From positions 62,001-126,000 of IMG/VR virus record IMGVR_UViG_3300043418_000114: 64,000 nt of DNA. One strand, 5' to 3'. Position numbers and translations under genes: made by a program. The notes beneath the pieces were generated by a model. That model saw only the letters and a list, made by a program, of their open reading frames with translations, had not been told where the DNA came from and did not search any database. Of this stretch, positions 32,459-61,442 are shown piece by piece (the first letter of the stretch is position 1; every line of letters begins with the position of its first letter).

Positions 32459-33310
32459 ATGTCCCAACAAAACATTGACTTTGGATCATTTCCAAACGAT
32501 CCATCAGCGGATTCTATCCAGACTGCATTTCAGAAAGCAAACACGAACTTTACACAGTTGTTTGCCGCCAGTACAAGCACAGCAGTTACATCGATCAACC
32601 GAACCCCAGGCGCAGGCATTACTGTAAATCAGTCAACTGGCAACGTTGTGCTATCTGCGAGTATTGCATGTGTTCAGGTAGCTACCAGCTCATTAAGCAT
32701 AGGTCGCAATGGCAACGGAGGCACTAGTGCTTCTATTACACAATCTAGCAGTCAAACACTGGTTATTGACATTAACCCAGATTTAGTTCAATCAAATAGC
32801 TTTGCCGCAGTAGGTGGAGGATTAGCTGGGTTCAACGGAACACTTAGTGCCGCATCTAGCGCACAACCAAACGTTACTAGTCTTGGTAATTTATTAGTCG
32901 CCAACGTTACTGGCAACTTGATTGCAGGCAATATCACTGCGAATGCGAATATCGACGCTAACGTTGTTACAGCAAACTACATTACTTCTAATAGTTTTGT
33001 TATCAAGTCAGTTGGAACAACAATTACTGCAACTGGCACAGTGCAATCGGATGCTACTCCATTAACTAAATCTATCAACGTTGTTTCATCAGCCGCAGTT
33101 GGTACAGGAGTTGTCTTGCCAACAGCTACTGCTGGTATGACTATTTACATTACCAACACTAGTGCTAATACGATCAACGTTTATCCAGCAGTCGGTGCAT
33201 CTATTAACACAGGCGCATCTAACGCATCAGTGAGTTTGAGTTCGAACGTAACTACTCAGTTCATCGCTCCATCTGCAACACAGTGGTTCACTGTGGCAAA
33301 TCTATCTTAA
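32459..33310 (+). CDS. Baseplate/fibre-associated structural protein
   Basis: IDFGSFPNDPSADSIQTAFQKANTNFTQL resembles gp9/gp10-type N-termini; Ser/Thr-rich. Confidence 0.6.
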   Translation: MSQQNIDFGSFPNDPSADSIQTAFQKANTNFTQLFAASTSTAVTSINRTPGAGITVNQSTGNVVLSASIACVQVATSSLSIGRNGNGGTSASITQSSSQTLVIDINPDLVQSNSFAAVGGGLAGFNGTLSAASSAQPNVTSLGNLLVANVTGNLIAGNITANANIDANVVTANYITSNSFVIKSVGTTITATGTVQSDATPLTKSINVVSSAAVGTGVVLPTATAGMTIYITNTSANTINVYPAVGASINTGASNASVSLSSNVTTQFIAPSATQWFTVANLS

Positions 33311-33318
33311 GGAAAATC

Positions 33319-33942
33319 ATGCAAGTTACATTAGACTTATTACAGCACATGTGTCCACGAACAAAGACTTCTATACTAGAATCTTATGTTGAACCATTAA
33401 ACACAGTGGCAGAATATTATGAAATGACTGCCAACCCAGCAAGATTAGCAGGATTTTTAGCTCAAGTAGCACATGAGTCAGGTGGATTCGTGGCAGTTAA
33501 AGAAAACCTAAACTATAGTGCCAAAGGATTGATGGGAATCTTTAAGAAGTATTTTCCAGACGAAGCAACAGCTAAAGCATACGAACGTCAACCAGAAAAG
33601 ATTGCAAACAAAGTATATGCCAATCGAATGAACAATGGCGATGAAGCAAGTGGCGATGGCTATCGTTTCTGTGGTCGTGGTTTGATCCAATTAACAGGTC
33701 GTGCCAACTATACAAAGTTTGCCGCTGACCTAGGCATGAGTATCGAAGACACAGTTGCCTACTTAGAAACACCTAACGGTGCAGTAGCTAGTGCTGGCTG
33801 GTTCTGGGACAATAATAACTTGAATCAATATTGCGATGCCAATGATTTCGTGACGCTAACTAAGCGTATAAATGGTGGAACTATCGGCATAGAAGATAGA
33901 AAACATCATTTCGATATCGCAATGCACTACTTACAGGGTTAA
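33319..33942 (+). CDS. Glycoside hydrolase family 19 endolysin
   Basis: FLAQVAHESGGF, ENLNYS, GRGLIQLTG, TKRINGG. Confidence 0.92.
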   Translation: MQVTLDLLQHMCPRTKTSILESYVEPLNTVAEYYEMTANPARLAGFLAQVAHESGGFVAVKENLNYSAKGLMGIFKKYFPDEATAKAYERQPEKIANKVYANRMNNGDEASGDGYRFCGRGLIQLTGRANYTKFAADLGMSIEDTVAYLETPNGAVASAGWFWDNNNLNQYCDANDFVTLTKRINGGTIGIEDRKHHFDIAMHYLQG

Positions 33943-41369: not shown

Positions 41370-41394
41370 AAAGAGGGCTTACGCCCTCTTTTTT
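41368..41394. terminator. Bidirectional terminator
   Basis: AAAAAGAGGGC-TTAC-GCCCTCTTTTTT between convergent genes. Confidence 0.85.
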
Positions 41395-42055
41395 ATTTAA
41401 TGGATTTGCAGTTCTCGCCATGCCATCTATTATAATTTCCTTTATCTACTAGTTTTTGGCAATGCGGACATGTGATGCTAGATTTGAACATGCCTTCTCT
41501 TATTTTTGATCTTCCCTCATCAGTCCAGTGTTTACCAAACATATGATGATCTGTCCCAAACTTTTTACTTTCATCACTGCGAGTTTTTCCATACATTGGA
41601 TTGTTATGATCACTAAAGTTCGGTCGATTAGCCTTCATCTTTTCAATAGATTCAAATGAATGCTTTTTACCGAACATCCCATTTAATTCACCTTCTAATT
41701 TTTTACCGAACATCCCGTTCTTTTTCCCGAAACTAGCTTTCCTTCTTCTAGTCTCAACTGAATCATTACTAGCACCCTCGCCACCATCAGTTTTATTTCT
41801 CAAAATTCCTGTATGTAGGTCTTGTCTACCATACCATTGTATCATTCTTCTTTCGATAGCAAAGGCACCGAGTTCAGTTAAGTTTTGTTCTAGAATTACT
41901 ATTTTTGAATGGTCTTTGGGCACACTAACAGTATGTCTTTCTACTGCTCTTTTGTTTTTACCCTTGCCGATATAATATGGCGTATTGTCTGATTGTCTAA
42001 TATATGCGTAGACATAAAATCCAGCTGGTGGATTATGTTTGTTATAAATATTCAT
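41393..42055 (-). mobile_element. Free-standing GIY-YIG homing endonuclease with NUMOD3 repeats
   Basis: FYVYAY...[16 protein letters not shown], repeated NGMFGKK/NPMYGKT/HMFGKH, C-terminal CPHC. Confidence 0.85.
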
Positions 42056-44968: not shown

Positions 44969-45778
44969 ATGGATCATTATCAAACTCTCGGAGTGGCTAA
45001 AACAGCCACTGCCGACGAAATCAAAAAAGCATATCGCAAACTTGCAAGTCAACACCACCCAGACAAGGGTGGTGATACTGCTAAATTCCAAGAAATTCAA
45101 ACAGCATACGATACTCTTTCTGACCCAAACAAGCGTCAAGAGTATGATAATCCGCGACCACAGTTTCAAGACTTTGGTGGTGGATTCCCAGGTGGCTTTA
45201 GTTTCCATCAGGGTGGTGGATTTGAAGACTTGTTTGAAATGTTCAATAGACACAACAATCAACAACGTAGACAACAACAAGTCTTTAGAACGGCAGTTCA
45301 AGTTAGTTTGTTTCAGGCATATCATGGTGGCGAACAAGCTATTAAATTGCAGACACATACTGGAATACACGGCGTGAATATCACTGTGCCCGTTGGTGTT
45401 AATAATGGTGATCAAGTTCGCATTGATAATGTAATCGATGGAGCATCATTATTGATTGAGTTCAGAATTCAGCCAGATTTGCGTTTTGAACGCAGAGGTC
45501 ATGATTTAATTGCAACTCAACAAGTGTCAGTTCTGGACCTTATCGTTGGAGGTTCATTTGAATTTACGTCATTAGCTGGCAAAACATTCGAAGTGAATAT
45601 TAAGCCAAAAACACAACCGTATGTTCAGTTGCGTATTCCTGGTCAAGGCATGCCAATAGGGAATTCTGGAAAATTTGGTGACCAAATTATATTGATTAAG
45701 CCCTTTATCCCTGATATGATCGATGAACAAGTTATTAATAGCATTAAGCAACAACAACTTAACTCTGGAGTAAAATGA
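44969..45778 (+). CDS. dnaJ: DnaJ-class co-chaperone (J-domain, G/F region, C-terminal domain, no Zn finger)
   Basis: HYQTLGV...[18 protein letters not shown]. Confidence 0.93.
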
Positions 45779-48039
45779 TTAATTCACCTGAAATTGAAAG
45801 CATTATCGAGAATGCGATTGAACTTGCGAAAACTCGTAAGCATCAATACTGTACCCTAGAACACTTGCTTCTAGCACTTGTCAGCCATCAACCATTCAAG
45901 AAATGTGTTGGTGGATTTGGCGCTGACGTTGACTCGTTGATTGCTGAACTGGGAACCTATCTAGATAGTCTTCACGCTATCGAAAGTAAAGACCCTGACG
46001 TTAACCCTCGCAAGACTAACGCACTTGAACGTGCCATTAATCGCAGTGTTACTCAAGTATTGTTTACTGGTCGTCGCCAAGTAACCACCATCGACTTTTA
46101 TTTGTCTATTGCCGCAGAAGGCAACAGTCACGCACATTACTTCCTGTTGAAGTATGGCATCAACAAGAATGAGTTCGTTGCTTACTGGCAAAAGAACTAT
46201 AAAGGCCAAGAGTTCACTAGCTCATTGACCGAAAATCAAGCTGATGAAATCCTTGAAGAATACACCACTAATTTGAGTCAACTTGCCAAAGCAGGCAAAC
46301 TTGAGCCTCTGATTGGTCGAAGCAAAGAATTGGATGATATCGTTAACGTTCTCGCTAAACGATTCAAAGCTAACGTGTTGATGGTTGGCGATCCTGGTGT
46401 TGGTAAGACTGCAATCGCAGAAGGTCTAGCTAACATGATTCAAGAAGGCAATGCTCCTGAGTTCCTAACTGACCACGAAGTATATTCACTTGAAGTTGGC
46501 GCATTGCTTGCTGGTAGTAAGTATCGTGGTGACTTTGAAGAAAAGGTCAAAGCTGTCCTTGATGCTCTGAACACCAAGAAGAAAGCTATCTTGTTCATTG
46601 ACGAAGCTCATACTATGAGTGGCGCAGGCTCAAGTAACAATGGTGGTCCTGACTTTGCTAACATGATCAAGCCTGCAATCACTAAGGGTACACTGAAAGT
46701 TATTGCAAGCACAACATGGGAAGAGTTCTACGAATCATTTGAGAAGGATCGTGCCTTGATGCGCCGATTCTATCGTGTTGCAATTGACGAGCCTAGTCAA
46801 GAATCTACCGTTCGCATTCTGTCTGGTTTGTCTACTCGCCTAAACGACTTCCACAAAGTCAACATCACAGAAGAAGCGATCAAGGCGGCAGTCGAAAGCT
46901 CTGCCCGATATATCCATGATCGTAAGAACCCTGATAAGTCGATTGACTTGTTAGATGCCGCATGTGCTAAACAACGTGTAGCGAACAACGAAGGTGCAAC
47001 CATCACCAAAGAATTGGTGTTTGAACAAGTTGAGAAGTTCACTGGCGTACCAGCCGATAAACTCAGTGGCGACAACTACGATATGATTAGTAACCTAGAT
47101 GTGAACGTCAAAGGCAAGTTGTATGGCCAAGATGAAACAGTTGACCAAGTTCTAGAACGTGTGTATGTTTCATTCGCTGGTATCAACAATGATACTAAGC
47201 CAACTGCAAGTTTCTTATTCTTGGGCCCAACTGGTACAGGTAAAACTGAACTAGCTAAGTTGCTGTCTAAGAATCTTGACATGCCGTTGCTCAAGTATGA
47301 TATGTCTGAATACGGTGAGAAACATTCAGTCTCTAGTTTGATTGGACCTCCTCCAGGCTATGTTGGCTTCGGCGACAGTCAAGTTGGTGGCGGTCGATTG
47401 ATTAGCGACTTGAGTAAGAACCCGCACTCAATCATGTTGTTTGACGAAGTTGAAAAAGCTCACCCTGATATTTTCAACATCTTCCTGCAAATGCTTGATG
47501 AAGGTACTATTACAGGCTCGAACGGCAAGAAGGTTAGTTGCAAAAACTCTATCATTATCTTGACTTCCAACTTGGGTAGTGCTGATGGTGAACGCAATCA
47601 GATCGGCTTCGGTAGTCAAGAAAAGACTGGCGAAGATGATAAAGCATTGAAAGACTTCTTTAAGCCAGAGTTCCGTAATCGTCTTGATCTTGTATGTAAG
47701 TTCAACAAGCTCGATGGTCTTGCAATCAAGAAAATCGTTGTTAAGTTTACCGAAGACTTAAAGAAACAGTTGCTCGATAAGCACAACATTACATTCAATC
47801 TAAGCGAAGGCGCCATTGAATATCTAGCAGAACAAGGCTATGATAAGAAGATGGGCGCACGACCACTAGCACGTAAAATTGACGAACTAGTGCGAGTTCC
47901 ACTATCGAAAAAGATTCTGTTTGAGCGTATCAAAAACGCAAACATCACCGCAGTGATGGGCACAGACGGTATCGAATTCAACGTAGTGAACACCACAACG
48001 GCACGAGTAGGCGAAGATGGCATTATTGAAGTCAATTGA
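45775..48039 (+). CDS. clpA: ATP-dependent Clp protease ATPase subunit, ClpA-like
   Basis: Clp N-domain, two AAA+ modules ([16 protein letters not shown]), IGF ClpP-docking loop, GARPL. Confidence 0.93.
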
Positions 48040-54000: not shown

Positions 54001-55098
54001 ATGAAAATCAATCAAATTATCGTTGAAACATCAACAACATCTGGTTCAATCTCCACTGTAGCACAACCTCTAGGCGAAGTTCAAGCTCGTTCAGTTAGTG
54101 GACTAGAGCCAGCAGAAAAAGTAATGAAGGGCAAAGCCAAAAAGAAGGGCCCTTATGCCAACTCTATTAGTGAAAGCAAGAAAAAAATCAAAGAAGCTGA
54201 ACTATCTGAGGAAGATGTAATTTTAGTTCCAGGTCAAGGTCGTCAATTCAAGCCTGGATTTCACAAGATTGACCCAGATAGAGCAGAACGCGAAGGCGAA
54301 ACCCTAAAGAACAGCCTACACACTATCATTCGTGTTGCTACTGCATTAGACGAAGAATTATCAACCAGAGATAACTTTCCAGAGTGGGTATCAGAGAAAA
54401 TTGGTGCCACTAAAGGCATGCTAGTGTCGATTGCAGACTACTTGATCAGTGCAGACGAAATGCAACATGATCCAGATGCAATGGAAGACATTACTGGAGC
54501 TGGCGTAATCGCTGGTGGCGCTCAATACGAAGGTAAGAACGTAGATCGCATGGTCAAACACATTACCAAGTCAGAAGAAAAAGCTGGCAAGTCACATGAT
54601 GAGGCAGAAGACATTGCATGGGCAACTGCTAACAAGCGTGGCATGTTAGATAATAAGAATAAAAAGAAACGTGCAGACGAAGGCGTTATGGACGTACTTA
54701 AGAATAAGTTCGGCAAGAAGCCAGCACCAGCGGCTCAGCCACGTGTTGAGCCAACACTTAATGCACCACAGCAATCAAAGCAACGTGTTCGTAAGCCAGC
54801 GGCATCAAGTAATCCATTTGGTAACATGATATCACAAATCACTCAGCCAGAAAAGCCTACGTTCAAGCCAACTAGCACAGGCTCAGTTGCACAGACTAGC
54901 ACAGGCATGATTCATGCTCCTAAAGCTAGCAATCCAAATTTAAAAGCACAATCAGCAGGAGCTGGACAACAGGTTCCAGTGAAGCAAAAATTAGATCCAA
55001 ACAGAATCATGAATGGTATTATGACATTGAACGACAATGAGTTCAAGCAAGTAGTAGATTTCGTGCGTAATCAAATCAGAAAAGGCCGCCCAGCATGA
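54001..55098 (+). CDS. Modular low-complexity putative internal head protein
   Basis: MKINQIIVE start; junctions ISES, IKEAE, LSEE, ADEG. Confidence 0.55.
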   Translation: MKINQIIVETSTTSGSISTVAQPLGEVQARSVSGLEPAEKVMKGKAKKKGPYANSISESKKKIKEAELSEEDVILVPGQGRQFKPGFHKIDPDRAEREGETLKNSLHTIIRVATALDEELSTRDNFPEWVSEKIGATKGMLVSIADYLISADEMQHDPDAMEDITGAGVIAGGAQYEGKNVDRMVKHITKSEEKAGKSHDEAEDIAWATANKRGMLDNKNKKKRADEGVMDVLKNKFGKKPAPAAQPRVEPTLNAPQQSKQRVRKPAASSNPFGNMISQITQPEKPTFKPTSTGSVAQTSTGMIHAPKASNPNLKAQSAGAGQQVPVKQKLDPNRIMNGIMTLNDNEFKQVVDFVRNQIRKGRPA

Positions 55099-58000
55099 GC
55101 AACATTTTTAAAGGTATTAAGCAGTTAAACGAGGTCGATCCTCGTAACTTTGACAGTGACATTGACTACTACGATGCACTGAATAGAAAGCCACGTGGTC
55201 GTAGCGAAGACGATTATGTAGATCCATCAGAAAAATATGATGAACCTATCGCCGCGCAAAAGAAGATCACTCGTCCTGAATATTCTATCAGTGATGATGA
55301 AGACAGAAAAGCTGGTTATAACATGACTCTAACTGTTAAGGCACCAACTACTCAGGCGGCTGAATGGGCAGCCAGTAGTTATGTTGATAGCAACTGGGGC
55401 GCCAAGAAACAAATTGGCAAGATTACTCCAATCGCTGATGGCGTTGTTCAAGTTCACATGGTTGACAATCACAAGTATGGTATGTGGAAGCCTTGGAAAG
55501 ACGAAGCTCCAACCCAAAAGCCTATTAGTTTCAATGAAGAACAACTAGATGAACTAAGCCCAGATACATTAGCTAGCTATAAAAAGAAAGCTGGAGCACA
55601 CGCTAGTGAACTAGACAAAGCCGCTTGGGGTGGTGCACCTGATGCACAACAAAAGATCAACAAAGCGAACAAGCGTTTCAGTGGTATCATTCGTGCTACT
55701 AAGAAAGAACTTGACAATGACGTTAAGGGCATTAAAGAAAACGCAGAAGAATTGAATATGGGTGATCCAGTTGTTGTAACTGGTGACGTTCAATTTAATG
55801 GAACTACTGGTGATATCGTTGGTTTTAGCAATGACAAACACTTTGTTATCGTTGACCTATACAATCATGGTAAGCGTAGTTTTCATTCAAGTGATGTAAG
55901 TTTCAATGACTATGCAGACAGTGACGATGAACATGAACATATCAATCGTGTTGCGGAAGACGAACAACAGTCTCCAAACACTGATTCAATCTTAGAATAT
56001 TTAACTAAAGCCGCTCGTAGTTTGCAACAGAATAAAGATATGTTCTCGCCAGAAGGCTGGGAAAGAATCAAGCGTAGTTATGAATTCTTACGTAGCTATT
56101 TGAAAGATGGCGACTATGAAGGTTTCCTATCAGCATACAATGAAATCTTGCGTAGTTATCCAGATTCAACTGGTCTATTGATTGACGAAATGTTTGCTAT
56201 GGCTGGTCTAGATGAAAACGCTACAATCGAAGATTTCTTAGCTAAAACATCTGAACTTGATGAAGGTCGAGTAAAAGATATCGCCGTTCAACGTCTTGAT
56301 TGGGAAGACATGAGTCCTCAACAATTCAATGGTCAATATGGCAGAACTAAGAATGACTGGGAAGGTCAATTCTCTAGACTGATGAACCCAAAGAAAGCTA
56401 AGGCTAAAAAGACAAGTGCACCAAAATCAACACGCGAGTTGGACTACTGCCCAACATGCCAACGTGGTGATAATCGTTGCGTATGTGAAGATCAGTCTAT
56501 ACAAAAAGGTACTCCTATCACAGTAACGTCAATCAAAGGTACAGTGTATAAAGGTACATTTGAACATGAGAATGAAAATTCAGTTGTTATGAAGACAACT
56601 GGTCGTGGTGGTAATCCACACACTAGCGCAATCGTTCCAGAAACTCATGTAGTTGCAATTAAGAAGTCACACATCAAGTCAATGACTCCTGAGTTGGCAG
56701 AAGATTTACCTCCACCAGAGAACGCACGTAAGACACAAATCGCAGGCACTCTACCTACATACAAGAAAGCCGCTGATATCTTGAACAAGACTGGCGTACA
56801 AGGTAAAGCACTTGACTTTGGTGCTGGTTTAGGTATGGGTACTGGTGAATTGGGTCCTGATGCACATAGCTATGAACCATTCCCTGGCGAAAAGTTCAAG
56901 CCACACTTTGTTGATGTAACAAAGATTCCAGATAACAGCTATCACAAGATTGTTAACTTGAACGTTCTAAACGTTGTACCTAATACAGGTGAACACAAGA
57001 TTCGTGATTCTATTGTTAAGAACATCGGTCGTGTATTGGCACCAGGTGGTGTTGCACTAATCACTACTCGTGGTAAAGATGTGTTAACAATCAAAGGCAC
57101 TCCTGGCGAAGAGCCAACTAGCATGATCAGTAAGATTGGTACATATCAAAAAGGCTTTACACAAAAAGAATTGTTGCAATACATTCAGCAAACATTGGGT
57201 AAAGGTTTCGAAGTATCTAGTATCAAACTAGGCCCAGCTGGCGTAATGATCAAGAAATTGGATCATCAAGGTGTGGCGGAAGGCTCTGAAAATATTCTTC
57301 CAAGAGGAACATCCGTAACAGTCCTACATAAAGGCAAGCAAGTACCTGGTAAAATTGTTAGATATGATGCTGGCAAAAATGGTTATTCAAATGCCTATGT
57401 AGTTGATGTTGGTGGATATGAATCTATATTTGTGCCAGCCAGTAAAATCCAAACGCAAGGTGTGGCGGAAGATACCGGCGACAACAAGTTTGACGCTATG
57501 ATGTCCAACGTTACTTCTAAGAAGTCACTACATGCTAGAGAAGCACTAGGCTTAATGAATGAATTAATTTATCAAGGTGGCGCATCATATAAAGAAGCAC
57601 TAGACCAAGCAAGCACAAGTTTTGAAATCGATCCAGCTAAGTTACATCAGCTATATCAACAAGACATTCGTGCATTAGATGAAGCTGAGTCTAAGCCAGT
57701 CAACATGAAGCGTTGGTTGCGTGACTTCGAACGTAGAGAAGACAATAACTTCCATACTGAAAACGTATTGGCGATGGCACAATTAGTTGGCACACCAGAA
57801 GATGTTGCAACTATGAAAAGTTTGGTAAAGCAACACAGAGGTTTTGGTCTATCTGAGAAACAGTTTGAGATTCGTCATGCAATCGCAGATAGATTGCGTC
57901 CACTAGTCAAGCAAAAGATTCAAGATAGTCAAGCACAAGAAATGGAAGAAGGTAAAACTGGACCAGGTCTATGGGCAAACATCCATGCAAAGCGTGAGCG

Positions 58001-58517
58001 TATCAAGCATGGTTCTGGTGAGAAGATGCGTAAGCCAGGTAGCAAAGGTGCACCAACTGCCGATAACTTTAAATCTGCACAAGCTGGTACCAACGAAGAC
58101 GTAGTTGATGAAGATTGGAAAAAAGTCAATCAACACGATAAGACTGATGGCATGAGCAAGAAAGCAGTCAAGGCTTATCGTAATGAGCATCCAGGTTCTA
58201 AACTACAAACAGCAGTTACTAAGAAGCCAAGTGAATTGAAGGCAGGTAGCAAAGATGCTAAACGCCGTAAATCTTTCTGTGCCAGAATGAGTGGCATGAA
58301 GGGTCCAATGAAGGATGAACATGGTAAGCAAACTCCAAAAGCTAAAGCATTAGCACGTTGGAACTGTGAGTCTATTGAACAGATGGAAGAGTTAGCAATG
58401 ATTGCCGAACAGAAGATTCAGGAAGCAAAAAATGCTAAACAACAAGCCGCAATTGCTATTGCAAAGAAAGAGAAAAAAGTCTCTGAAAGCAATATCATGA
58501 AGGGCATTAAAAAATGA
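55095..58517 (+). CDS. 1140-aa modular polyprotein incl. class I SAM methyltransferase, SH3/KOW-like modules and a DUF6321-like basic domain
   Basis: ALDFGAGLG...NLNVLNVV; RRKSFCARMSG...ARWNC; modules bounded by LNE, LDE, IKE, VAE, LAE, MEE, VDE. Confidence 0.7.
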   Translation: MSNIFKGIKQLNEVDPRNFDSDIDYYDALNRKPRGRSEDDYVDPSEKYDEPIAAQKKITRPEYSISDDEDRKAGYNMTLTVKAPTTQAAEWAASSYVDSNWGAKKQIGKITPIADGVVQVHMVDNHKYGMWKPWKDEAPTQKPISFNEEQLDELSPDTLASYKKKAGAHASELDKAAWGGAPDAQQKINKANKRFSGIIRATKKELDNDVKGIKENAEELNMGDPVVVTGDVQFNGTTGDIVGFSNDKHFVIVDLYNHGKRSFHSSDVSFNDYADSDDEHEHINRVAEDEQQSPNTDSILEYLTKAARSLQQNKDMFSPEGWERIKRSYEFLRSYLKDGDYEGFLSAYNEILRSYPDSTGLLIDEMFAMAGLDENATIEDFLAKTSELDEGRVKDIAVQRLDWEDMSPQQFNGQYGRTKNDWEGQFSRLMNPKKAKAKKTSAPKSTRELDYCPTCQRGDNRCVCEDQSIQKGTPITVTSIKGTVYKGTFEHENENSVVMKTTGRGGNPHTSAIVPETHVVAIKKSHIKSMTPELAEDLPPPENARKTQIAGTLPTYKKAADILNKTGVQGKALDFGAGLGMGTGELGPDAHSYEPFPGEKFKPHFVDVTKIPDNSYHKIVNLNVLNVVPNTGEHKIRDSIVKNIGRVLAPGGVALITTRGKDVLTIKGTPGEEPTSMISKIGTYQKGFTQKELLQYIQQTLGKGFEVSSIKLGPAGVMIKKLDHQGVAEGSENILPRGTSVTVLHKGKQVPGKIVRYDAGKNGYSNAYVVDVGGYESIFVPASKIQTQGVAEDTGDNKFDAMMSNVTSKKSLHAREALGLMNELIYQGGASYKEALDQASTSFEIDPAKLHQLYQQDIRALDEAESKPVNMKRWLRDFERREDNNFHTENVLAMAQLVGTPEDVATMKSLVKQHRGFGLSEKQFEIRHAIADRLRPLVKQKIQDSQAQEMEEGKTGPGLWANIHAKRERIKHGSGEKMRKPGSKGAPTADNFKSAQAGTNEDVVDEDWKKVNQHDKTDGMSKKAVKAYRNEHPGSKLQTAVTKKPSELKAGSKDAKRRKSFCARMSGMKGPMKDEHGKQTPKAKALARWNCESIEQMEELAMIAEQKIQEAKNAKQQAAIAIAKKEKKVSESNIMKGIKK
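57267..57471 (+). repeat. Perfect 16-bp in-frame direct repeat CAAGGTGTGGCGGAAG (57267-57282, 57456-57471)
   Basis: Read directly; 189-nt period; both copies encode QGVAE. Confidence 0.9.
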
Positions 58518-58583: not shown

Positions 58584-59024
58584 ATGTTATCAGATAATTT
58601 AAAAGTATTACTAGCAAGCACTCAGTCGTTTGCTATCAAATCTCAGAACTTTCATTGGAATATTGAAGGGTCTGACTTCCCACAATATCATGCATTCTAT
58701 GATACTCTTTACGGAGATGTAGCAGAAACTATTGACAAAATCGCTGAGTATATCAGAATTTTGGGACACTACACGCCTGGCAGTCTATCACGCTACAGTG
58801 AATTGTCAATCATCCAAGATCAAACAAAGATTCCACGTGCTGAATTGATGTTTCAAGAATCACTACACGATACTCAAGTAATGATTGAATTGGTTCAAGC
58901 TATGTTTGATGAAGCTACCCAAGAGCGTCAACAAGGCATTGCCAACTACATGGCTGAATTACAAGACCTATATGCCAAGAAAGCATGGTTCATTCGTTCT
59001 ATCTTAAAGAAAGACCGTGAGTAA
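58584..59024 (+). CDS. dps: Dps / ferritin-like DNA protection protein
   Basis: FHWNIEGSDFPQYH, IDKIAEYIRILG, KKAWFIRS. Confidence 0.9.
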   Translation: MLSDNLKVLLASTQSFAIKSQNFHWNIEGSDFPQYHAFYDTLYGDVAETIDKIAEYIRILGHYTPGSLSRYSELSIIQDQTKIPRAELMFQESLHDTQVMIELVQAMFDEATQERQQGIANYMAELQDLYAKKAWFIRSILKKDRE

Positions 59025-59704
59025 TGAGAGCGTTTGAGTTTTTAGGAGAACAAATTGTTGATGAAATGCCGCTACCGGCAGATTGGGATGCATCCCAAAT
59101 GCGTCAACAAAGTACTACATTCAAATCTCGCTTGGCATACGCATTAGAACGCGCCAAGAAGCTAGGAACAGGTTCTAGTCGTGTTGCCACCGTGATCGAA
59201 TATCAGGGTCGTCCTACAGTGCTTAAAATCGCTAAGAACGCCAAGGGTCTAGCACAGAATAGTGTAGAGGCAGATATTCTCAGTGATGGTTATGGCAGTC
59301 AACTTGGCATTCTTATCCCTATCATTGACTATGATGAACAGAATCGTGAACCAAGTTGGATTCACACTGAAATGGCACAGAAGGCTACTGACAAGCAATT
59401 AAGCACCATCATGAAATGTGGTGATCTGTCCATGCTAGTTCATGCCGCCAACTCAATCGCAGGTAAAAAAAGTTTCTACTCGTATGATAGCGTGGTGAAA
59501 TATTTAAGAGAACATGGTTCTAGTGACAGTGATATCGAAACATTTACTGACTATGCAAACGTTCTAGCTGACCTTGCAAACTCATTTGATGTTGAATTGG
59601 CTGATATGGCACGTGCCGCGAACTGGGGATTATATCACGGTAAACCGGTTATTGTTGATGTTGGTTTCAACAGCAACGTTATGAATCAATATTACAAAAA
59701 ATGA
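59024..59704 (+). CDS. Protein-kinase-like fold protein
   Basis: MRAFEFLGE start; LGTGSSRVA Gly loop, VLKIAK, QNSVE, DMARAANWG, IVDVG. Confidence 0.65.
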   Translation: MRAFEFLGEQIVDEMPLPADWDASQMRQQSTTFKSRLAYALERAKKLGTGSSRVATVIEYQGRPTVLKIAKNAKGLAQNSVEADILSDGYGSQLGILIPIIDYDEQNREPSWIHTEMAQKATDKQLSTIMKCGDLSMLVHAANSIAGKKSFYSYDSVVKYLREHGSSDSDIETFTDYANVLADLANSFDVELADMARAANWGLYHGKPVIVDVGFNSNVMNQYYKK

Positions 59705-60252
59705 GAGCAGAAGAATTCCTATTTGAGTTTGAATTACCAAAGAACAAATGGGAATTGGTAGTATCTAATGGTGATAAAGAAGAATTAGGTTCTGATTTAG
59801 TTTCTCTAGTTAGACATGCTTATAGTAATACTCCACACGGTAGTTTTGTAAACAGTATAAAAGATGTCATTCCAAGTGATTGGAATGTCATTGATTGGGA
59901 CCAAGATCCAGACGTTGATAGTTGTGTGTTCTATCGCAGTAATAGACCTACTGAAAATTGGACAGGATACAAGATTCAAGGAATCGGACATGATGGCTCA
60001 CGTACTAGTAAAGATAAAGCAATAAATAAAGTACAAGAGCTACTGAGTAGACCAGGCGTTTGGATTGAATCAAGTGACGCAATGCGCCATTTATTGAAAA
60101 AATTAAATGTCCAGTCAATCAATGATGAGCAATTTTTACAACATCTATTTAATGATCCCAATCTAAAAATGGTCAGTGACGACACATACACAAGAGCATT
60201 AAGTGGTGGTAATGTAACAGAGACAGTATTTGGATATCCTAAATTAAAATGA
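59701..60252 (+). CDS. Hypothetical protein, possibly GNAT-like
   Basis: MRAEEFLFE start; ATGA overlaps. Confidence 0.6.
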   Translation: MRAEEFLFEFELPKNKWELVVSNGDKEELGSDLVSLVRHAYSNTPHGSFVNSIKDVIPSDWNVIDWDQDPDVDSCVFYRSNRPTENWTGYKIQGIGHDGSRTSKDKAINKVQELLSRPGVWIESSDAMRHLLKKLNVQSINDEQFLQHLFNDPNLKMVSDDTYTRALSGGNVTETVFGYPKLK

Positions 60253-61442
60253 GAGCTACAGAATTTATCACAGAACGTAACAACGGCACTCGCTGGACAG
60301 GCGATGAAATCTATCGTCAAATTGGTGATGAATGTCTCACTGAACTTTTCGAGCCAGGTAAGCCATTTGAATGGGATTTTCGTGGCAGTGAGGAGGCACA
60401 TGCATCATTTACGATAGGCAATGTGCCATATAGATTTACTGCACATACCAACGGTGGTAATCAGTGGGAAATAGAATTCAAAGTAGATAAGAATACATCT
60501 GATAAGAACGCCAAGTATGGACGTACTGGCACTGGCAACTCAGCAGAAGTAATGTCAACAGTCACTGATATCATGCGCGACTTTCTGGGCATGTACAAGG
60601 ACAAAATTAAATATTTGACCTTCAGCGCGGAGGAAGAATCTAGAAAATCATTGTACATGAAAATGGCAAAGCGATTACTTCCTACATGGCGTCTCGGCAG
60701 TAACGATAAAATATATTGGTTAGCTAATCCAGATCATTTAGACGAAGGCGTAGTTGACTGGGCCAAGAAGGGTGCCGCGGCAGGTGCAATTGCACTCGGT
60801 GCATTAGGAGCTGGTGGTGCTGGAGCAAAGCAAATGCCACAACAAGTTCAAAAGCCTGCAGTTATTCAGCCTGCTAAAAAAGTTCAACCACAAGCACAGC
60901 AACAAACAAAAGCACCTGAGCAATTCAATGTGTTAAGTAACAACATTAACAACGAGATTACTCTACAAAGAGCCGCCAGAAAAGCAGGCATTAAGGGGCA
61001 AGAGTTAGCACAGTTTATGGCGCAAATGAAACACGAAAGCTGGGATTTTGAGCGCATGAAAGAGAAAGCACAACCAGGTGTAAAAGACTATTATGCCAAA
61101 CGTTACGACTTAAAGTATTCACCAAAGACAGCGAAGATTTTAGGCAATAAACATGCGGGTGATGGCGCAAGATATCATGGTCGTGGTTTCGTTCAACTAA
61201 CTGGCAGAGACAACTACAGAATGGCAAGTGATGCGTTGGGTATTGATCTATTGAATCACCCTGAACTAGCTAGTAAGCCAGATGTTGCCGCAAAAATAGC
61301 AGTATGGTATTGGAATACAAGAGTTAAGCCTAGTGTTCAAAACTTTGCAGATACTGTAGCAGTGACTAAGAAGATTAACCCAGCGGCAAGAGGTCTAGAG
61401 AATAGACACGAGAATTTTAAAGACTACATGAAAATAATATGA
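60249..61442 (+). CDS. Modular protein with C-terminal GH19 lysozyme domain
   Basis: MRATEFITE start; RTGTGNSAEVMSTV domain; LDEG junction; FMAQMKHES, YHGRGFVQLTG, VTKKINP. Confidence 0.8.
   Translation: MRATEFITERNNGTRWTGDEIYRQIGDECLTELFEPGKPFEWDFRGSEEAHASFTIGNVPYRFTAHTNGGNQWEIEFKVDKNTSDKNAKYGRTGTGNSAEVMSTVTDIMRDFLGMYKDKIKYLTFSAEEESRKSLYMKMAKRLLPTWRLGSNDKIYWLANPDHLDEGVVDWAKKGAAAGAIALGALGAGGAGAKQMPQQVQKPAVIQPAKKVQPQAQQQTKAPEQFNVLSNNINNEITLQRAARKAGIKGQELAQFMAQMKHESWDFERMKEKAQPGVKDYYAKRYDLKYSPKTAKILGNKHAGDGARYHGRGFVQLTGRDNYRMASDALGIDLLNHPELASKPDVAAKIAVWYWNTRVKPSVQNFADTVAVTKKINPAARGLENRHENFKDYMKII

What the first reader, a model, noticed from the sequence alone, without database searches (positions are those of the whole stretch)
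57267..57471. In-frame gene cassette flanked by a perfect 16-bp repeat that also encodes the predicted cleavage site
Seen: CAAGGTGTGGCGGAAG occurs twice, 189 nt apart, bracketing one small SH3-like module (LPRGTSVTVLHKGKQVPGKIVRYD...). Both copies read QGVAE and use identical GTG-GCG codons, although by eye this genome prefers A/T-ending Val and Ala codons. A partial match (GTGTTGCGGAAG, RVAED) lies at another junction near 55948. Inference: the sequence may be constrained as DNA, acting as a recombination/insertion site that adds or removes effector modules while preserving frame and a protease site. That would be an integron-like domain-shuffling mechanism inside one ORF.
Basis: partly seen in the sequence, partly recalled or inferred. 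Interest (0 to 1): 0.8.

Follow-up and report, generated by a model that had tools for sequence, protein, structure and literature searches.

The report
Standard DNA connector for swapping protein modules
The 16-base repeat is two copies of a 21-base "connector" that many uncultured phages keep nearly letter-for-letter between the modules of large multi-module proteins likely packed into the virion, and small in-frame protein cassettes are gained, lost and swapped between genomes exactly at it.

Summary
CAAGGTGTGGCGGAAG occurs twice, 189 nt apart, in one 1140-aa ORF (55095-58517). It brackets a 63-aa Tudor/SH3-like barrel, and both copies read QGVAE.

It is one case of a lineage-wide feature. 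(E)QGVAE|G marks module boundaries in hundreds of mosaic phage proteins. Its synonymous positions are almost fixed, with consensus GAGCAAGGTGTGGCGGAAGGC. The exact 21-mer fills 40% of 98 independent sites, against 0.045% expected from codon usage. A second junction peptide, KEEVELDE, from other phages shows little such constraint.

Syntenic orthologues have this slot empty with one junction copy, or filled by different modules. A 207-nt cassette (57267-57473) is 100% identical in an otherwise unrelated contig, and identity stops at the outer edges of the two repeats. Of 266 homology breakpoints between contigs, 44% lie within 15 nt of a connector, against 1-2.5% expected.

Best reading: a standard in-frame connector used for short-homology recombination. 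It probably also encodes a T4-type prohead-protease site (hydrophobic-x-Glu|), which is inferred, not shown. No integrase or attC-like hairpin was found, so it resembles an integron in outcome only. I found no published description.

The parts
55095..58517 (+). 1140-aa modular (polyvalent-type) protein gene, intact. It consists of modules separated by x-x-Glu| junctions.
   Evidence: ORF list and translation. Different modules match different phages. Orthologues are syntenic but mosaic.
57264..57284 (+). Left connector CAT CAA GGT GTG GCG GAA GGC (H-Q-G-V-A-E|G). The 16-mer repeat copy 1 is 57267-57282. Predicted cleavage lies between E729 and G730.
   Evidence: It matches the lineage consensus GAGCAAGGTGTGGCGGAAGGC.
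57282..57470 (+). 63-aa cassette module (G730-E792), a Tudor/SH3-like beta-barrel of unknown function.
   Evidence: AlphaFold2 pLDDT 83.5 and Foldseek hits to Tudor/chromo domains. There are 159 homologous clusters at varied positions in varied proteins.
57453..57473 (+). Right connector CAA ACG CAA GGT GTG GCG GAA GAT (Q-T-Q-G-V-A-E|D). The 16-mer repeat copy 2 is 57456-57471. Predicted cleavage lies between E792 and D793.
57267..57473 (+). The mobile unit as seen by comparison: connector + module + connector, 207 nt.
   Evidence: It is 100% identical in L256/L260, 97% in L257, 96% in L261 and 88% in L258. Each copy sits in a different gene, and flanks fall to 19-36% identity at the repeat edges in the three contigs aligned base by base.
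56712..57260 (+). SAM-dependent methyltransferase module upstream of the slot (aa about 540-722).
   Evidence: PF13489 match is below Pfam's cut-off. It is 59% identical to a Roseobacter phage CRP-3 ORF. It is near-identical in protein and about 90% identical in DNA in six orthologues.
56490..56702 (+). A second inserted small barrel-like module (D466-E536), between CVCE|D and ELAE|D.
   Evidence: It is absent in P0002/4/5/6, which read CVCEDMPPPE, and is replaced by an unrelated module ending QGVAE|D in P0003. Homologues occur in other mosaics.
55947..55961 (+). It is a junction-like site that is not in connector form.
   Evidence: Orthologues use GTT GCA here, so synonymous change is allowed. 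P0005 has a deletion starting at this point.
57471..57959 (+). Helical domain downstream of the slot (DTGDNKFDAMM...).
   Evidence: It is only 63-75% identical in DNA to the five orthologues compared, against about 90% left of the slot. The slot is therefore a mosaic breakpoint. In L262 another module precedes it.
58134..58361 (+). C-terminal DUF6321 module.
   Evidence: PF19846 at E 2.5e-14. It is shared with pelagiphage and cyanophage proteins.
59024..61442 (+). Three downstream genes (59024-59704, 59701-60252, 60249-61442). Their products start MRAFEFLGE, MRAEEFLFE and MRATEFITE, resembling the T4 capsid targeting sequence MKTYQEFIAE.
   Evidence: for the N-termini. PMC8442874 for the T4 sequence. 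The third gene carries a GH19 lysozyme-like domain.

Best explanation
The two 16-mers are copies of a standard in-frame connector. The nucleotide consensus is GAG CAA GGT GTG GCG GAA GGC, and the peptide is (E)QGVAE|G/D/A. A broad group of uncultured, low-GC phages places it between the modules of large mosaic ('polyvalent'-type) proteins.

At the DNA level, the 13-22 bp of identity at every junction serves as the homology through which modules are exchanged. Exchange occurs by short-homology recombination or template switching, between polyprotein genes of co-infecting phages or within one genome.
- Recombination between the two flanking copies deletes a module in frame and leaves one copy.
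- Crossovers in the connectors on either side insert or replace a module.

The connector stays uniform because only cassettes carrying the common version can move. This is a transmission bias, possibly reinforced by selection for a shufflable arsenal.

At the protein level, the connector is a flexible linker with Val at P3 and Glu at P1. It is probably cut by a T4-type prohead protease after the polyprotein is packed into the prohead, releasing the modules.

Shown here: the nucleotide constraint, the presence/absence/replacement alleles, and identical cassettes in unrelated contexts with breakpoints at connectors. Inferred: the recombination pathway, packaging, and cleavage.
For: Nucleotide constraint:
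- 98 dereplicated EQGVAEG sites found with a fully degenerate pattern carry 6.2 bits of synonymous information.
- The exact 21-mer fills 39 of 98 sites, against 0.045% expected (892-fold, P about 1e-103). Flanks carry about 0.1 bit per nt.
- 99 further xxGVAEG sites not selected by the pattern show the same bias.
- The bias holds across GC3 of 0.22-0.55 and includes common codons (GGT, GAA, GGC), so it is a specific string and not codon rarity.
- Control: the junction KEEVELDE of other lineages carries only 0.96 bits.

Units of exchange:
- In six syntenic orthologues the slot after the methyltransferase is empty with one junction (P0002, P0006), or holds this module (window), or another module between perfect GGTGTGGCGGAAGGC repeats (P0003), or two other modules (P0004, P0005).
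- L262 adds a further allele.
- The 207-nt cassette 57267-57473 is 100% identical in L256/L260. That contig otherwise shares only 67% identity with the window, over a single 200-nt stretch. Copies of 88-97% identity lie in three more contexts.
- Of 266 internal ends of alignments at 90% identity or more between contigs, 116 (44%) lie within 15 nt of a connector, against 1-2.5% expected.
- 107 adjacent connector pairs form perfect 13-22 bp direct repeats around modules with a median of 77 aa.
- All 177 copies of the 14-mer are in the GVAEG frame of long ORFs.

Protease reading:
- The motif sits only at module boundaries. GVAE occurs 103 times in the 120 homologues, against 3.8 expected.
- It matches the hydrophobic-x-Glu| logic of T4 gp21 (L/I-x-E) and SPN3US (A-x-E) (PMC9026906 and PMC10052503).
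- Decayed junctions keep V-x-E-G with free codons, for example GAC GTT GAA GAA GGT and CCA GTA TCA GAA GGT.
- Neighbouring genes carry T4 CTS-like leaders.
- The junction residues are the low-confidence end of the structure model.
Against: - No recombination event was observed directly. The evidence is comparative and comes from assembled metagenomic contigs.
- The predicted precise-excision allele of this very gene was not found in viral or metagenome contigs.
- Homology breakpoints are also enriched at the control junction, which lacks strong nucleotide conservation: 22% against 1.6% expected. Nucleotide identity is therefore not strictly needed for exchange at module boundaries. It could be a consequence of frequent exchange rather than its cause.
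- Other module boundaries in the same gene (CVCE|D, RV|AED) changed without a long repeat.
- Cleavage, packaging and the protease gene were not seen. The head genes lie outside the window.
- Second-order selection for evolvability is generally weak, so what maintains the connector remains an argument, not a measurement.
Confidence: 0.65

Rival explanations
1. The 21-nt string is conserved for an RNA- or translation-level role. Examples are a programmed ribosome pause at module boundaries to aid folding, an mRNA processing site, or a binding site for a phage factor. Recombination at it would then be a by-product of the repeated sequence.
For: - Three of the seven consensus codons are rare in these genomes: GAG, GTG and GCG.
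- Every copy of the motif is on the coding strand and in frame.
- Exchange at module boundaries also occurs where nucleotides are not conserved.
Against: - Common codons are fixed just as strongly: GGT 93% against 42% background, GAA 91% against 77%, GGC 73% against 33%. The same string is used across GC3 of 0.22-0.55, which points to a specific sequence rather than slow decoding.
- Polyproteins of other lineages built from the same modules show no such codon constraint at their junction.
- There is no conserved flank or secondary structure.
Confidence: 0.12
2. A dedicated sequence-specific enzyme targets the connector and drives cassette insertion and excision. This would be a programmed integron-like or homing-like system for protein domains. 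Candidates are a homing-type endonuclease or a site-specific recombinase encoded by these phages.
For: - The conserved length of about 12-21 nt, the asymmetry and the very sharp edges resemble a nuclease or recombinase recognition site.
- Cassettes are bounded by identical copies, like a duplicated core site.
- The window encodes a homing-endonuclease-like ORF at 41393-42055.
Against: - No integrase or recombinase was found among the window ORFs scanned.
- There are no inverted repeats, no hairpin (z-scores -1.25 to +0.2) and no conserved arms next to the core.
- The motif never occurs outside the coding frame.
- Ordinary short-homology recombination in T4-type phages is sufficient to explain the pattern.
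Confidence: 0.12
3. Only the peptide QGVAE is constrained, as a linker or protease site. The identical codons in the window would then be chance or recent duplication, with no DNA-level meaning.
For: With five codons, identical encoding of two QGVAE copies has a prior probability of about 1.5%. That is small but not negligible for a single pair.
Against: - About 200 sites with unrelated flanks share the same rare codons.
- Orthologues differ at about 10% of bases in the adjacent methyltransferase, with near-identical protein, yet keep the junction codons.
- The control junction shows that peptide conservation alone does not fix codons.
Confidence: 0.03

Closest known systems
Polyvalent proteins of phages and conjugative elements (Iyer, Burroughs, Anand, de Souza, Aravind 2017; PMC5512222)
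   Same: Large phage proteins that string together many unrelated domains, such as methyltransferase, ART-PolyVal, ParB, cytidylyltransferase-like and lysozyme domains. They show extreme mosaicism and are thought to be packaged and delivered with the DNA. Homologues here carry PF18760, PF02195, PF01467 and PF22028.
   Different: That paper describes no common linker motif, no nucleotide-level connector and no precise cassette boundaries. The terms 'linker' and 'shuffl' do not occur in it. It proposes processing by built-in zincin-like peptidase domains, not by a prohead protease.
T4 internal proteins, capsid targeting sequence and gp21 prohead protease (PMC9026906, PMC8442874); giant-phage equivalents phiKZ gp175 and SPN3US gp245 (PMC10052503)
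   Same: Proteins are packed in the prohead and cut after Glu in a three-residue motif: L/I-x-E in T4 and A-x-E in SPN3US. Here the motif is V-A-E at every junction. Neighbouring genes start with MRxxEF(I/L)xE, like the T4 MKTYQEFIAE. The phage has T4-type clamp loader, sheath and neck genes.
   Different: In T4 the cut removes a short leader or degrades scaffold. Here the sites would divide one long polyprotein into many modules. The site is also fixed at the codon level, which is not reported for T4-type sites. Cleavage is untested here.
Motif-mediated modular shuffling in T4-type phages: PeSL cassettes (PMC2839356, PMC4122927) and conserved glycine-rich motifs / His boxes in tail-fibre adhesins (PMC3157838; Tetart et al. 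1998 as cited there)
   Same: Short conserved sequences that recur within a genome and between phages act as the homology for inserting, deleting and swapping the segments between them.
   Different: PeSLs are intergenic promoter plus stem-loop units that move whole genes. Glycine-rich motifs are structural core elements of one protein family. The connector here is a coding, in-frame linker used across many unrelated modules and proteins, with a probable second role as a protease site.
Polymorphic toxin systems (CdiA VENN, Rhs DPxGL/PxxxxDPxGL demarcation motifs; own knowledge, also alluded to in PMC5512222)
   Same: A short conserved motif marks the border of a variable module. It is conserved in DNA so that stored cassettes can recombine in. 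In Rhs it is also the site of proteolytic release.
   Different: Those systems swap only the C-terminal toxin, together with an immunity gene, from orphan cassettes in a bacterial genome. Here internal modules at many positions are swapped. No immunity genes or orphan cassettes were seen: all 177 copies of the 14-mer lie in long ORFs.
Integron gene cassettes
   Same: Units bounded by a recurring site are captured, lost and reordered at a defined place.
   Different: Integrons move promoterless whole genes using IntI and folded attC hairpins. None of these features is present here.

Membership tests
Polyvalent proteins (Iyer et al. 2017) | One phage or plasmid polypeptide combining several unrelated domains in variable architectures | tested here: met
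   At least seven modules, each matching different phages. Orthologues and homologues show shuffled orders and contents.
Polyvalent proteins (Iyer et al. 2017) | Presence of the characteristic domain families (methylases, ART-PolyVal, ParB, peptidases and others) | tested here: met
   The window protein has a methyltransferase module (PF13489, below cut-off). Sources name homologues as SAM-dependent methyltransferase. Homologues carry PF18760, PF02195, PF01467 and PF22028.
Polyvalent proteins (Iyer et al. 2017) | Packaged in the virion and delivered into the host with the DNA | not testable with these tools
   Context only: the gene cluster has CTS-like leaders and lysozyme-like genes.
Substrates of T4-type prohead protease (gp21 family) | Cleavage motif of hydrophobic or small residue at P3, any residue at P2, and Glu at P1 | tested here: met
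   V-A-E at both junctions and at about 200 junctions elsewhere. The motif definition is from PMC9026906 and PMC10052503. This is sequence agreement only.
Substrates of T4-type prohead protease (gp21 family) | A gp21-like protease encoded by the same genome, and cleavage actually occurring | not tested
   The head morphogenesis genes are not in the 64-kb window, and no proteomic data exist.
Substrates of T4-type prohead protease (gp21 family) | Short N-terminal capsid targeting sequence ending in the cleavage motif | tested here: inconclusive
   Three neighbours start MRxxEF(I/L)xE, like the T4 MKTYQEFIAE. The 1140-aa protein itself starts MSNIFKGIKQLNE, which ends in L-N-E but otherwise differs.
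Integron | IntI tyrosine recombinase with attI next to the cassette array | tested here: not met
   No integrase or recombinase was found among the window ORFs scanned against PHROGs and Pfam. Not every window ORF was scanned, and the rest of the 364-kb genome was not seen.
Integron | attC sites: imperfect inverted repeats that fold as hairpins | tested here: not met
   Junction regions fold no better than shuffles, with z-scores of -1.25 to +0.2. The flanks are not conserved, and there are no nearby inverted repeats.
Integron | Cassettes are whole promoterless genes | tested here: not met
   The cassettes are in-frame protein modules of about 50-230 aa inside one ORF.
PeSL mobile regulatory cassettes of T4-type phages | Intergenic early promoter plus stem-loop repeated on both sides of variable genes | tested here: not met
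   The repeat is coding and in frame, and has no stem-loop.
Polymorphic toxin cassette systems (CDI/Rhs) | Conserved demarcation motif followed by a variable C-terminal toxin, with a cognate immunity gene and orphan cassettes | tested here: not met
   The conserved demarcation motif is present by analogy. However, the modules are internal, no immunity gene pattern was seen, and no orphan cassettes occur outside long ORFs.

The most novel reading that the evidence does not exclude
The 21-nt connector is the recognition site of a dedicated phage-encoded DNA enzyme, either a homing-type nuclease or a recombinase. On this reading these phages run a programmed, site-specific system that captures, excises and reshuffles protein-domain cassettes inside the genes of their packaged arsenal. 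It would be the protein-domain counterpart of an integron, and the same site would double as the protease cut that later frees each domain.
Probability: 0.13. Interest if true: 0.95.

Novelty: new variant of a known kind. Interest (0 to 1): 0.8.

Why it matters
Phages carry large, fast-changing multi-domain proteins thought to be injected to disarm host defences. How their domain sets are reshuffled so freely has been described only as "mosaicism".

This finding points to a concrete mechanism: a fixed nucleotide connector that keeps the reading frame, probably supplies the protease site that separates the parts, and marks the exact units of lateral exchange. One 207-nt cassette is identical in otherwise unrelated contigs.

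The finding has three uses:
- It gives a simple rule for cutting thousands of unannotated phage proteins into their modules.
- It gives a measurable model for selection, or transmission bias, acting on synonymous sites to maintain exchangeability.
- It gives an easily testable system: recode the connector and measure module loss, gain and cleavage.

It is also a natural analogue of the standard junctions used in synthetic biology.

Tried and rejected
- Nucleotide search of the gene against 50,697 isolate phage records found no match.
- A search with the junction itself gave only chance-level partial hits. No cultured phage in that collection carries the connector.
- Literature: QGVAE is found only in alpha-synuclein papers. 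GVAEG together with 'phage' gave no paper. The polyvalent-protein paper has no linker motif.
- The 21-mer in 185,579 bacterial and archaeal genomes gave two hits. One is a mis-binned phage contig (L135). The other is a 66%-GC IS-like ORF that looks like chance (L134).
- Integron-like features (hairpin, conserved arms, integrase) were not found (and the PHROG/Pfam scans).
- The rare-codon pause idea was weighed and downgraded, because common codons are fixed too and the control junction lacks the effect.
- The predicted precise-deletion allele of this gene (methyltransferase end + one connector + DTGDNK) has no match in viral or metagenome contigs.
One Pfam call failed on a frame slip and was corrected.
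- Pfam gives no family for the three small barrel modules.
Full report
**1. The observation**

The 16-mer CAAGGTGTGGCGGAAG is present exactly twice in the window, at 57267-57282 and 57456-57471, 189 nt apart on the + strand. It is the only perfect direct repeat of 16 nt or more in its gene.

Both copies lie in frame in one intact ORF, 55095-58517 (1140 aa), and read Q-G-V-A-E. In ORFs of the window GTG is 13.5% of Val codons and GCG is 10% of Ala codons. Two independent encodings of QGVAE would be identical with P about 0.015.

The partial match RVAED (CGT GTT GCG GAA GAC) is at 55947-55961.

The 63 residues between the repeats have 159 homologous clusters in a 1.8-billion-protein library. They fold with good confidence (pLDDT 83.5) as a small beta-barrel. 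Its best PDB matches are Tudor/chromo domains, that is, SH3-like barrels.

**2. Context**

The window comes from a 364-kb viral contig, IMGVR_UViG_3300043418_000114. It is a jumbo myovirus. It has a T4-type clamp loader, sheath, tube and neck genes, a DnaB-like helicase, PhoH and a homing-endonuclease-like ORF. Its sheath is closest (46% identity) to Sinorhizobium phage Phosso and Pseudomonas phage PA5oct.

The 1140-aa protein is a chain of modules:
- three small barrel-like modules;
- a helical module;
- a SAM methyltransferase;
- another helical domain;
- a C-terminal DUF6321.

Each module matches different phages. Homologues combine these modules with ART-PolyVal, ParB, cytidylyltransferase-like, DUF6934 and acetyltransferase domains. 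This places the protein in the class of 'polyvalent proteins' described by Iyer et al. 2017 (PMC5512222).

Three genes just downstream begin MRAFEFLGE, MRAEEFLFE and MRATEFITE. These closely resemble the T4 capsid targeting sequence MKTYQEFIAE, which directs internal proteins into the prohead and is removed by gp21 (PMC8442874; PMC9026906).

**3. The junction is family-wide**

Among 120 homologues, GVAE occurs 103 times where 3.8 are expected from composition. It is usually found as (E/K/Q)(Q/E/K)GVAE followed by G, A or D, with up to five copies per protein, and always between modules.

**4. The junction is constrained as nucleotides**

In the syntenic orthologues the swapping junctions are nearly always GGT GTG GCG GAA GGC. 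Non-swapping x-A-E sites use ordinary codons, GTT GCA or TTG GCA.

After removing sites with similar flanks, 98 sites remained, with these frequencies:

| Codon | Observed | Background in the same ORFs |
|---|---|---|
| GAG | 79% | 23% |
| CAA | 88% | 71% |
| GGT | 93% | 42% |
| GTG | 88% | 21% |
| GCG | 87% | 12% |
| GAA | 91% | 77% |
| GGC | 73% | 33% |

Further results from these sites:
- The flanks carry about 0.1 bit per position.
- The exact 21-mer GAGCAAGGTGTGGCGGAAGGC fills 39 of 98 sites, against 0.045% expected.
- Ninety-nine other xxGVAEG sites in the same ORFs, which the pattern did not select, give the same figures.
- The bias is the same across GC3 of 0.22-0.55.
- All 177 copies of the 14-mer core lie in the GVAEG frame of the coding strand of long ORFs.

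As a control, more distant relatives of the same barrel module are flanked by a different junction, EEVELDE or EEVEQIDE. The same kind of scan for KEEVELDE shows near-background codon use: 0.96 bits against 6.2 bits. Conservation of a junction peptide therefore does not by itself fix codons.

**5. Modules are gained, lost and replaced exactly at the junction**

Six orthologues share the neighbouring genes. Their methyltransferase is about 90% identical in DNA and near-identical in protein. Between it and the next conserved domain they differ as follows:

| Orthologue | Content of the slot |
|---|---|
| Window | The Tudor-like module between two connectors |
| P0002 | Nothing; a single GAT GTG GCG GAA GGC |
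| P0006 | Nothing; a decayed single junction GAC GTT GAA GAA GGT |
| P0003 | An unrelated 58-aa module between two perfect copies of GGTGTGGCGGAAGGC |
| P0004 | Two other modules |
| P0005 | Two other modules |

L262 adds one more allele. DNA identity to the right of the slot falls to 63-75% for the window against the others, so the slot is also a mosaic breakpoint.

A second slot, after CVCE|D, behaves the same way. The window's module there (56490-56702) is absent from four orthologues and replaced in a fifth.

**6. The cassette moves between genomes**

The 207 nt from 57267 to 57473 (connector, module, connector) are 100% identical in contig 3300022743_000112 (L256/L260). There they lie in a different 510-aa protein.

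Identity drops to 26-36% exactly at the outer edges of the two repeats. The only other similarity between that locus and the whole window is one 200-nt stretch at 67%.

Copies at 97%, 96% and 88% identity lie in three further unrelated genes: L257, L261 and L258. The L258 gene lies next to a terminase. More diverged copies sit directly upstream of DUF6321 in P0095 and L118.

Taken systematically, 116 of 266 internal ends of alignments at 90% identity or more between connector-bearing loci lie within 15 nt of a connector core. Random positions give 1-2.5%.

Adjacent connectors in one ORF form perfect direct repeats of 13-22 bp (median 17) around modules with a median of 77 aa. The window's 16 bp and 63 aa are therefore typical.

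**7. Mechanism**

The simplest account is short-homology recombination or template switching at a standard connector. T4-type phages recombine intensely, and deletion between short direct repeats a few hundred bases apart is well known in phages and bacteria (own knowledge).

Uniformity of the connector would be kept by transmission bias: only cassettes with the common version can be copied into new contexts.

Two cautions apply:
- Breakpoints are also enriched, though less (22% against 1.6%), at the control junction, which lacks strong nucleotide conservation. Selection for intact modules alone produces part of the pattern. The nucleotide identity could be a consequence of frequent exchange as much as its cause.
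- The exact deletion allele predicted for this gene was not found in assembled contigs.

An RNA- or translation-level role cannot be excluded. It fits poorly, however, with the fixation of common codons and with the absence of the effect in the control lineage. A dedicated enzyme is possible, but the site has no hairpin, no conserved arms and no nearby integrase.

**8. The protease-site reading**

V-A-E| fits the hydrophobic-x-Glu rule of T4 gp21 and the A-x-E rule of SPN3US gp245. Decayed junctions keep V-x-E-G while their codons drift. The junction residues are the low-confidence tail of the structure model. Neighbouring genes carry T4-like targeting leaders. Together this makes cleavage in the prohead likely, but neither the protease gene nor any cleavage product was seen.

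**9. Comparison and novelty**

The nearest known things are:
- polyvalent proteins, which share the architecture but have no described connector;
- T4 internal proteins and gp21, which share the likely processing;
- PeSL cassettes and tail-fibre glycine-rich motifs, which show motif-mediated shuffling but are intergenic or structural;
- polymorphic-toxin demarcation motifs, where a border motif also doubles as recombination homology and cleavage site, but only for C-terminal toxins with immunity genes.

Integron membership fails on every defining feature tested. I found no paper describing this motif, no isolate phage carrying it, and essentially no bacterial genome carrying it.

I rate it a new variant of a known kind (motif-mediated modular exchange) with unusually clean evidence, and of high interest.

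The gene is intact and belongs to a phage of environmental bacteria.

Noticed in passing
window 55098-55121, 55715-55739, 58488-58514: The peptide SNIxKGIK occurs at the N-terminus (MSNIFKGIKQ), internally (NDVKGIKEN) and as the last nine residues after VSE| (SNIMKGIKK*) of the 1140-aa protein. The orthologues P0003, P0005 and L262 end in KSNILKGLM*. It may be a second boundary or targeting signal, or a relic of fusion of neighbouring genes that each began with it.
   Followed up: partly
window 59024-59704, 59701-60252, 60249-61442 (also 54001-55098): The downstream genes begin MRAFEFLGE, MRAEEFLFE and MRATEFITE, much like the T4 capsid targeting sequence MKTYQEFIAE. ORF 54001 begins MKINQIIVE. 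The whole 49-62 kb block looks like a cluster of packaged internal or ejected proteins, including a ferritin/Dps-like protein, a GH19 lysozyme-like protein and a nuclease.
   Followed up: partly
loci L136-L255 (other phage lineages): The same Tudor-like module is flanked in other phages by a different junction peptide (KEEVELDE, EEVEQIDE or SRLAEA) with near-background codon usage. Homology breakpoints are still enriched there (22% within 15 nt).
   Followed up: yes
L134 7041-7061 (OZ219786.1, alphaproteobacterial MAG, 66% GC): The exact 21-mer consensus occurs once in a GC-rich bacterial chromosome, inside a small IS/transposase-like ORF (…GKEQGVAEGKED…). It is probably chance (about 0.3 expected), but it is odd.
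   Followed up: partly
window 41393-42055 (-): A homing-endonuclease-like ORF (PHROG 314/655, E about 1e-10) lies next to a PhoH-like gene. It is the only candidate sequence-specific nuclease seen in the window.
   Followed up: no
window 44969-45778 and 45775-48039: A J-domain (DnaJ-like) protein is followed immediately by a 754-aa Clp/Lon-type AAA+ 'ATP-dependent protease' homologue. This would be a phage-encoded chaperone/unfoldase pair just upstream of the internal-protein cluster.
   Followed up: no
window 33283-33942 and 60249-61442: There are two separate GH19 (chitinase-like lysozyme) domains. One is in the tail/baseplate region. The other is in the CTS-like internal-protein cluster, fused to an N-terminal module.
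   Followed up: no
L258 374-5051: A 1016-aa connector-bearing mosaic protein (P0125) lies directly after a large terminase gene. This is the usual place of a portal gene, on a contig that is only 7 kb long. Connector-linked modules are therefore not confined to jumbo phages.
   Followed up: no
window 55947-56260 versus P0005: P0005 lacks the roughly 110-aa helical module after RVAED. The deletion runs from ...INRV to ...EG|RVKD, between two short RV-coding stretches and not between connectors.
   Followed up: no
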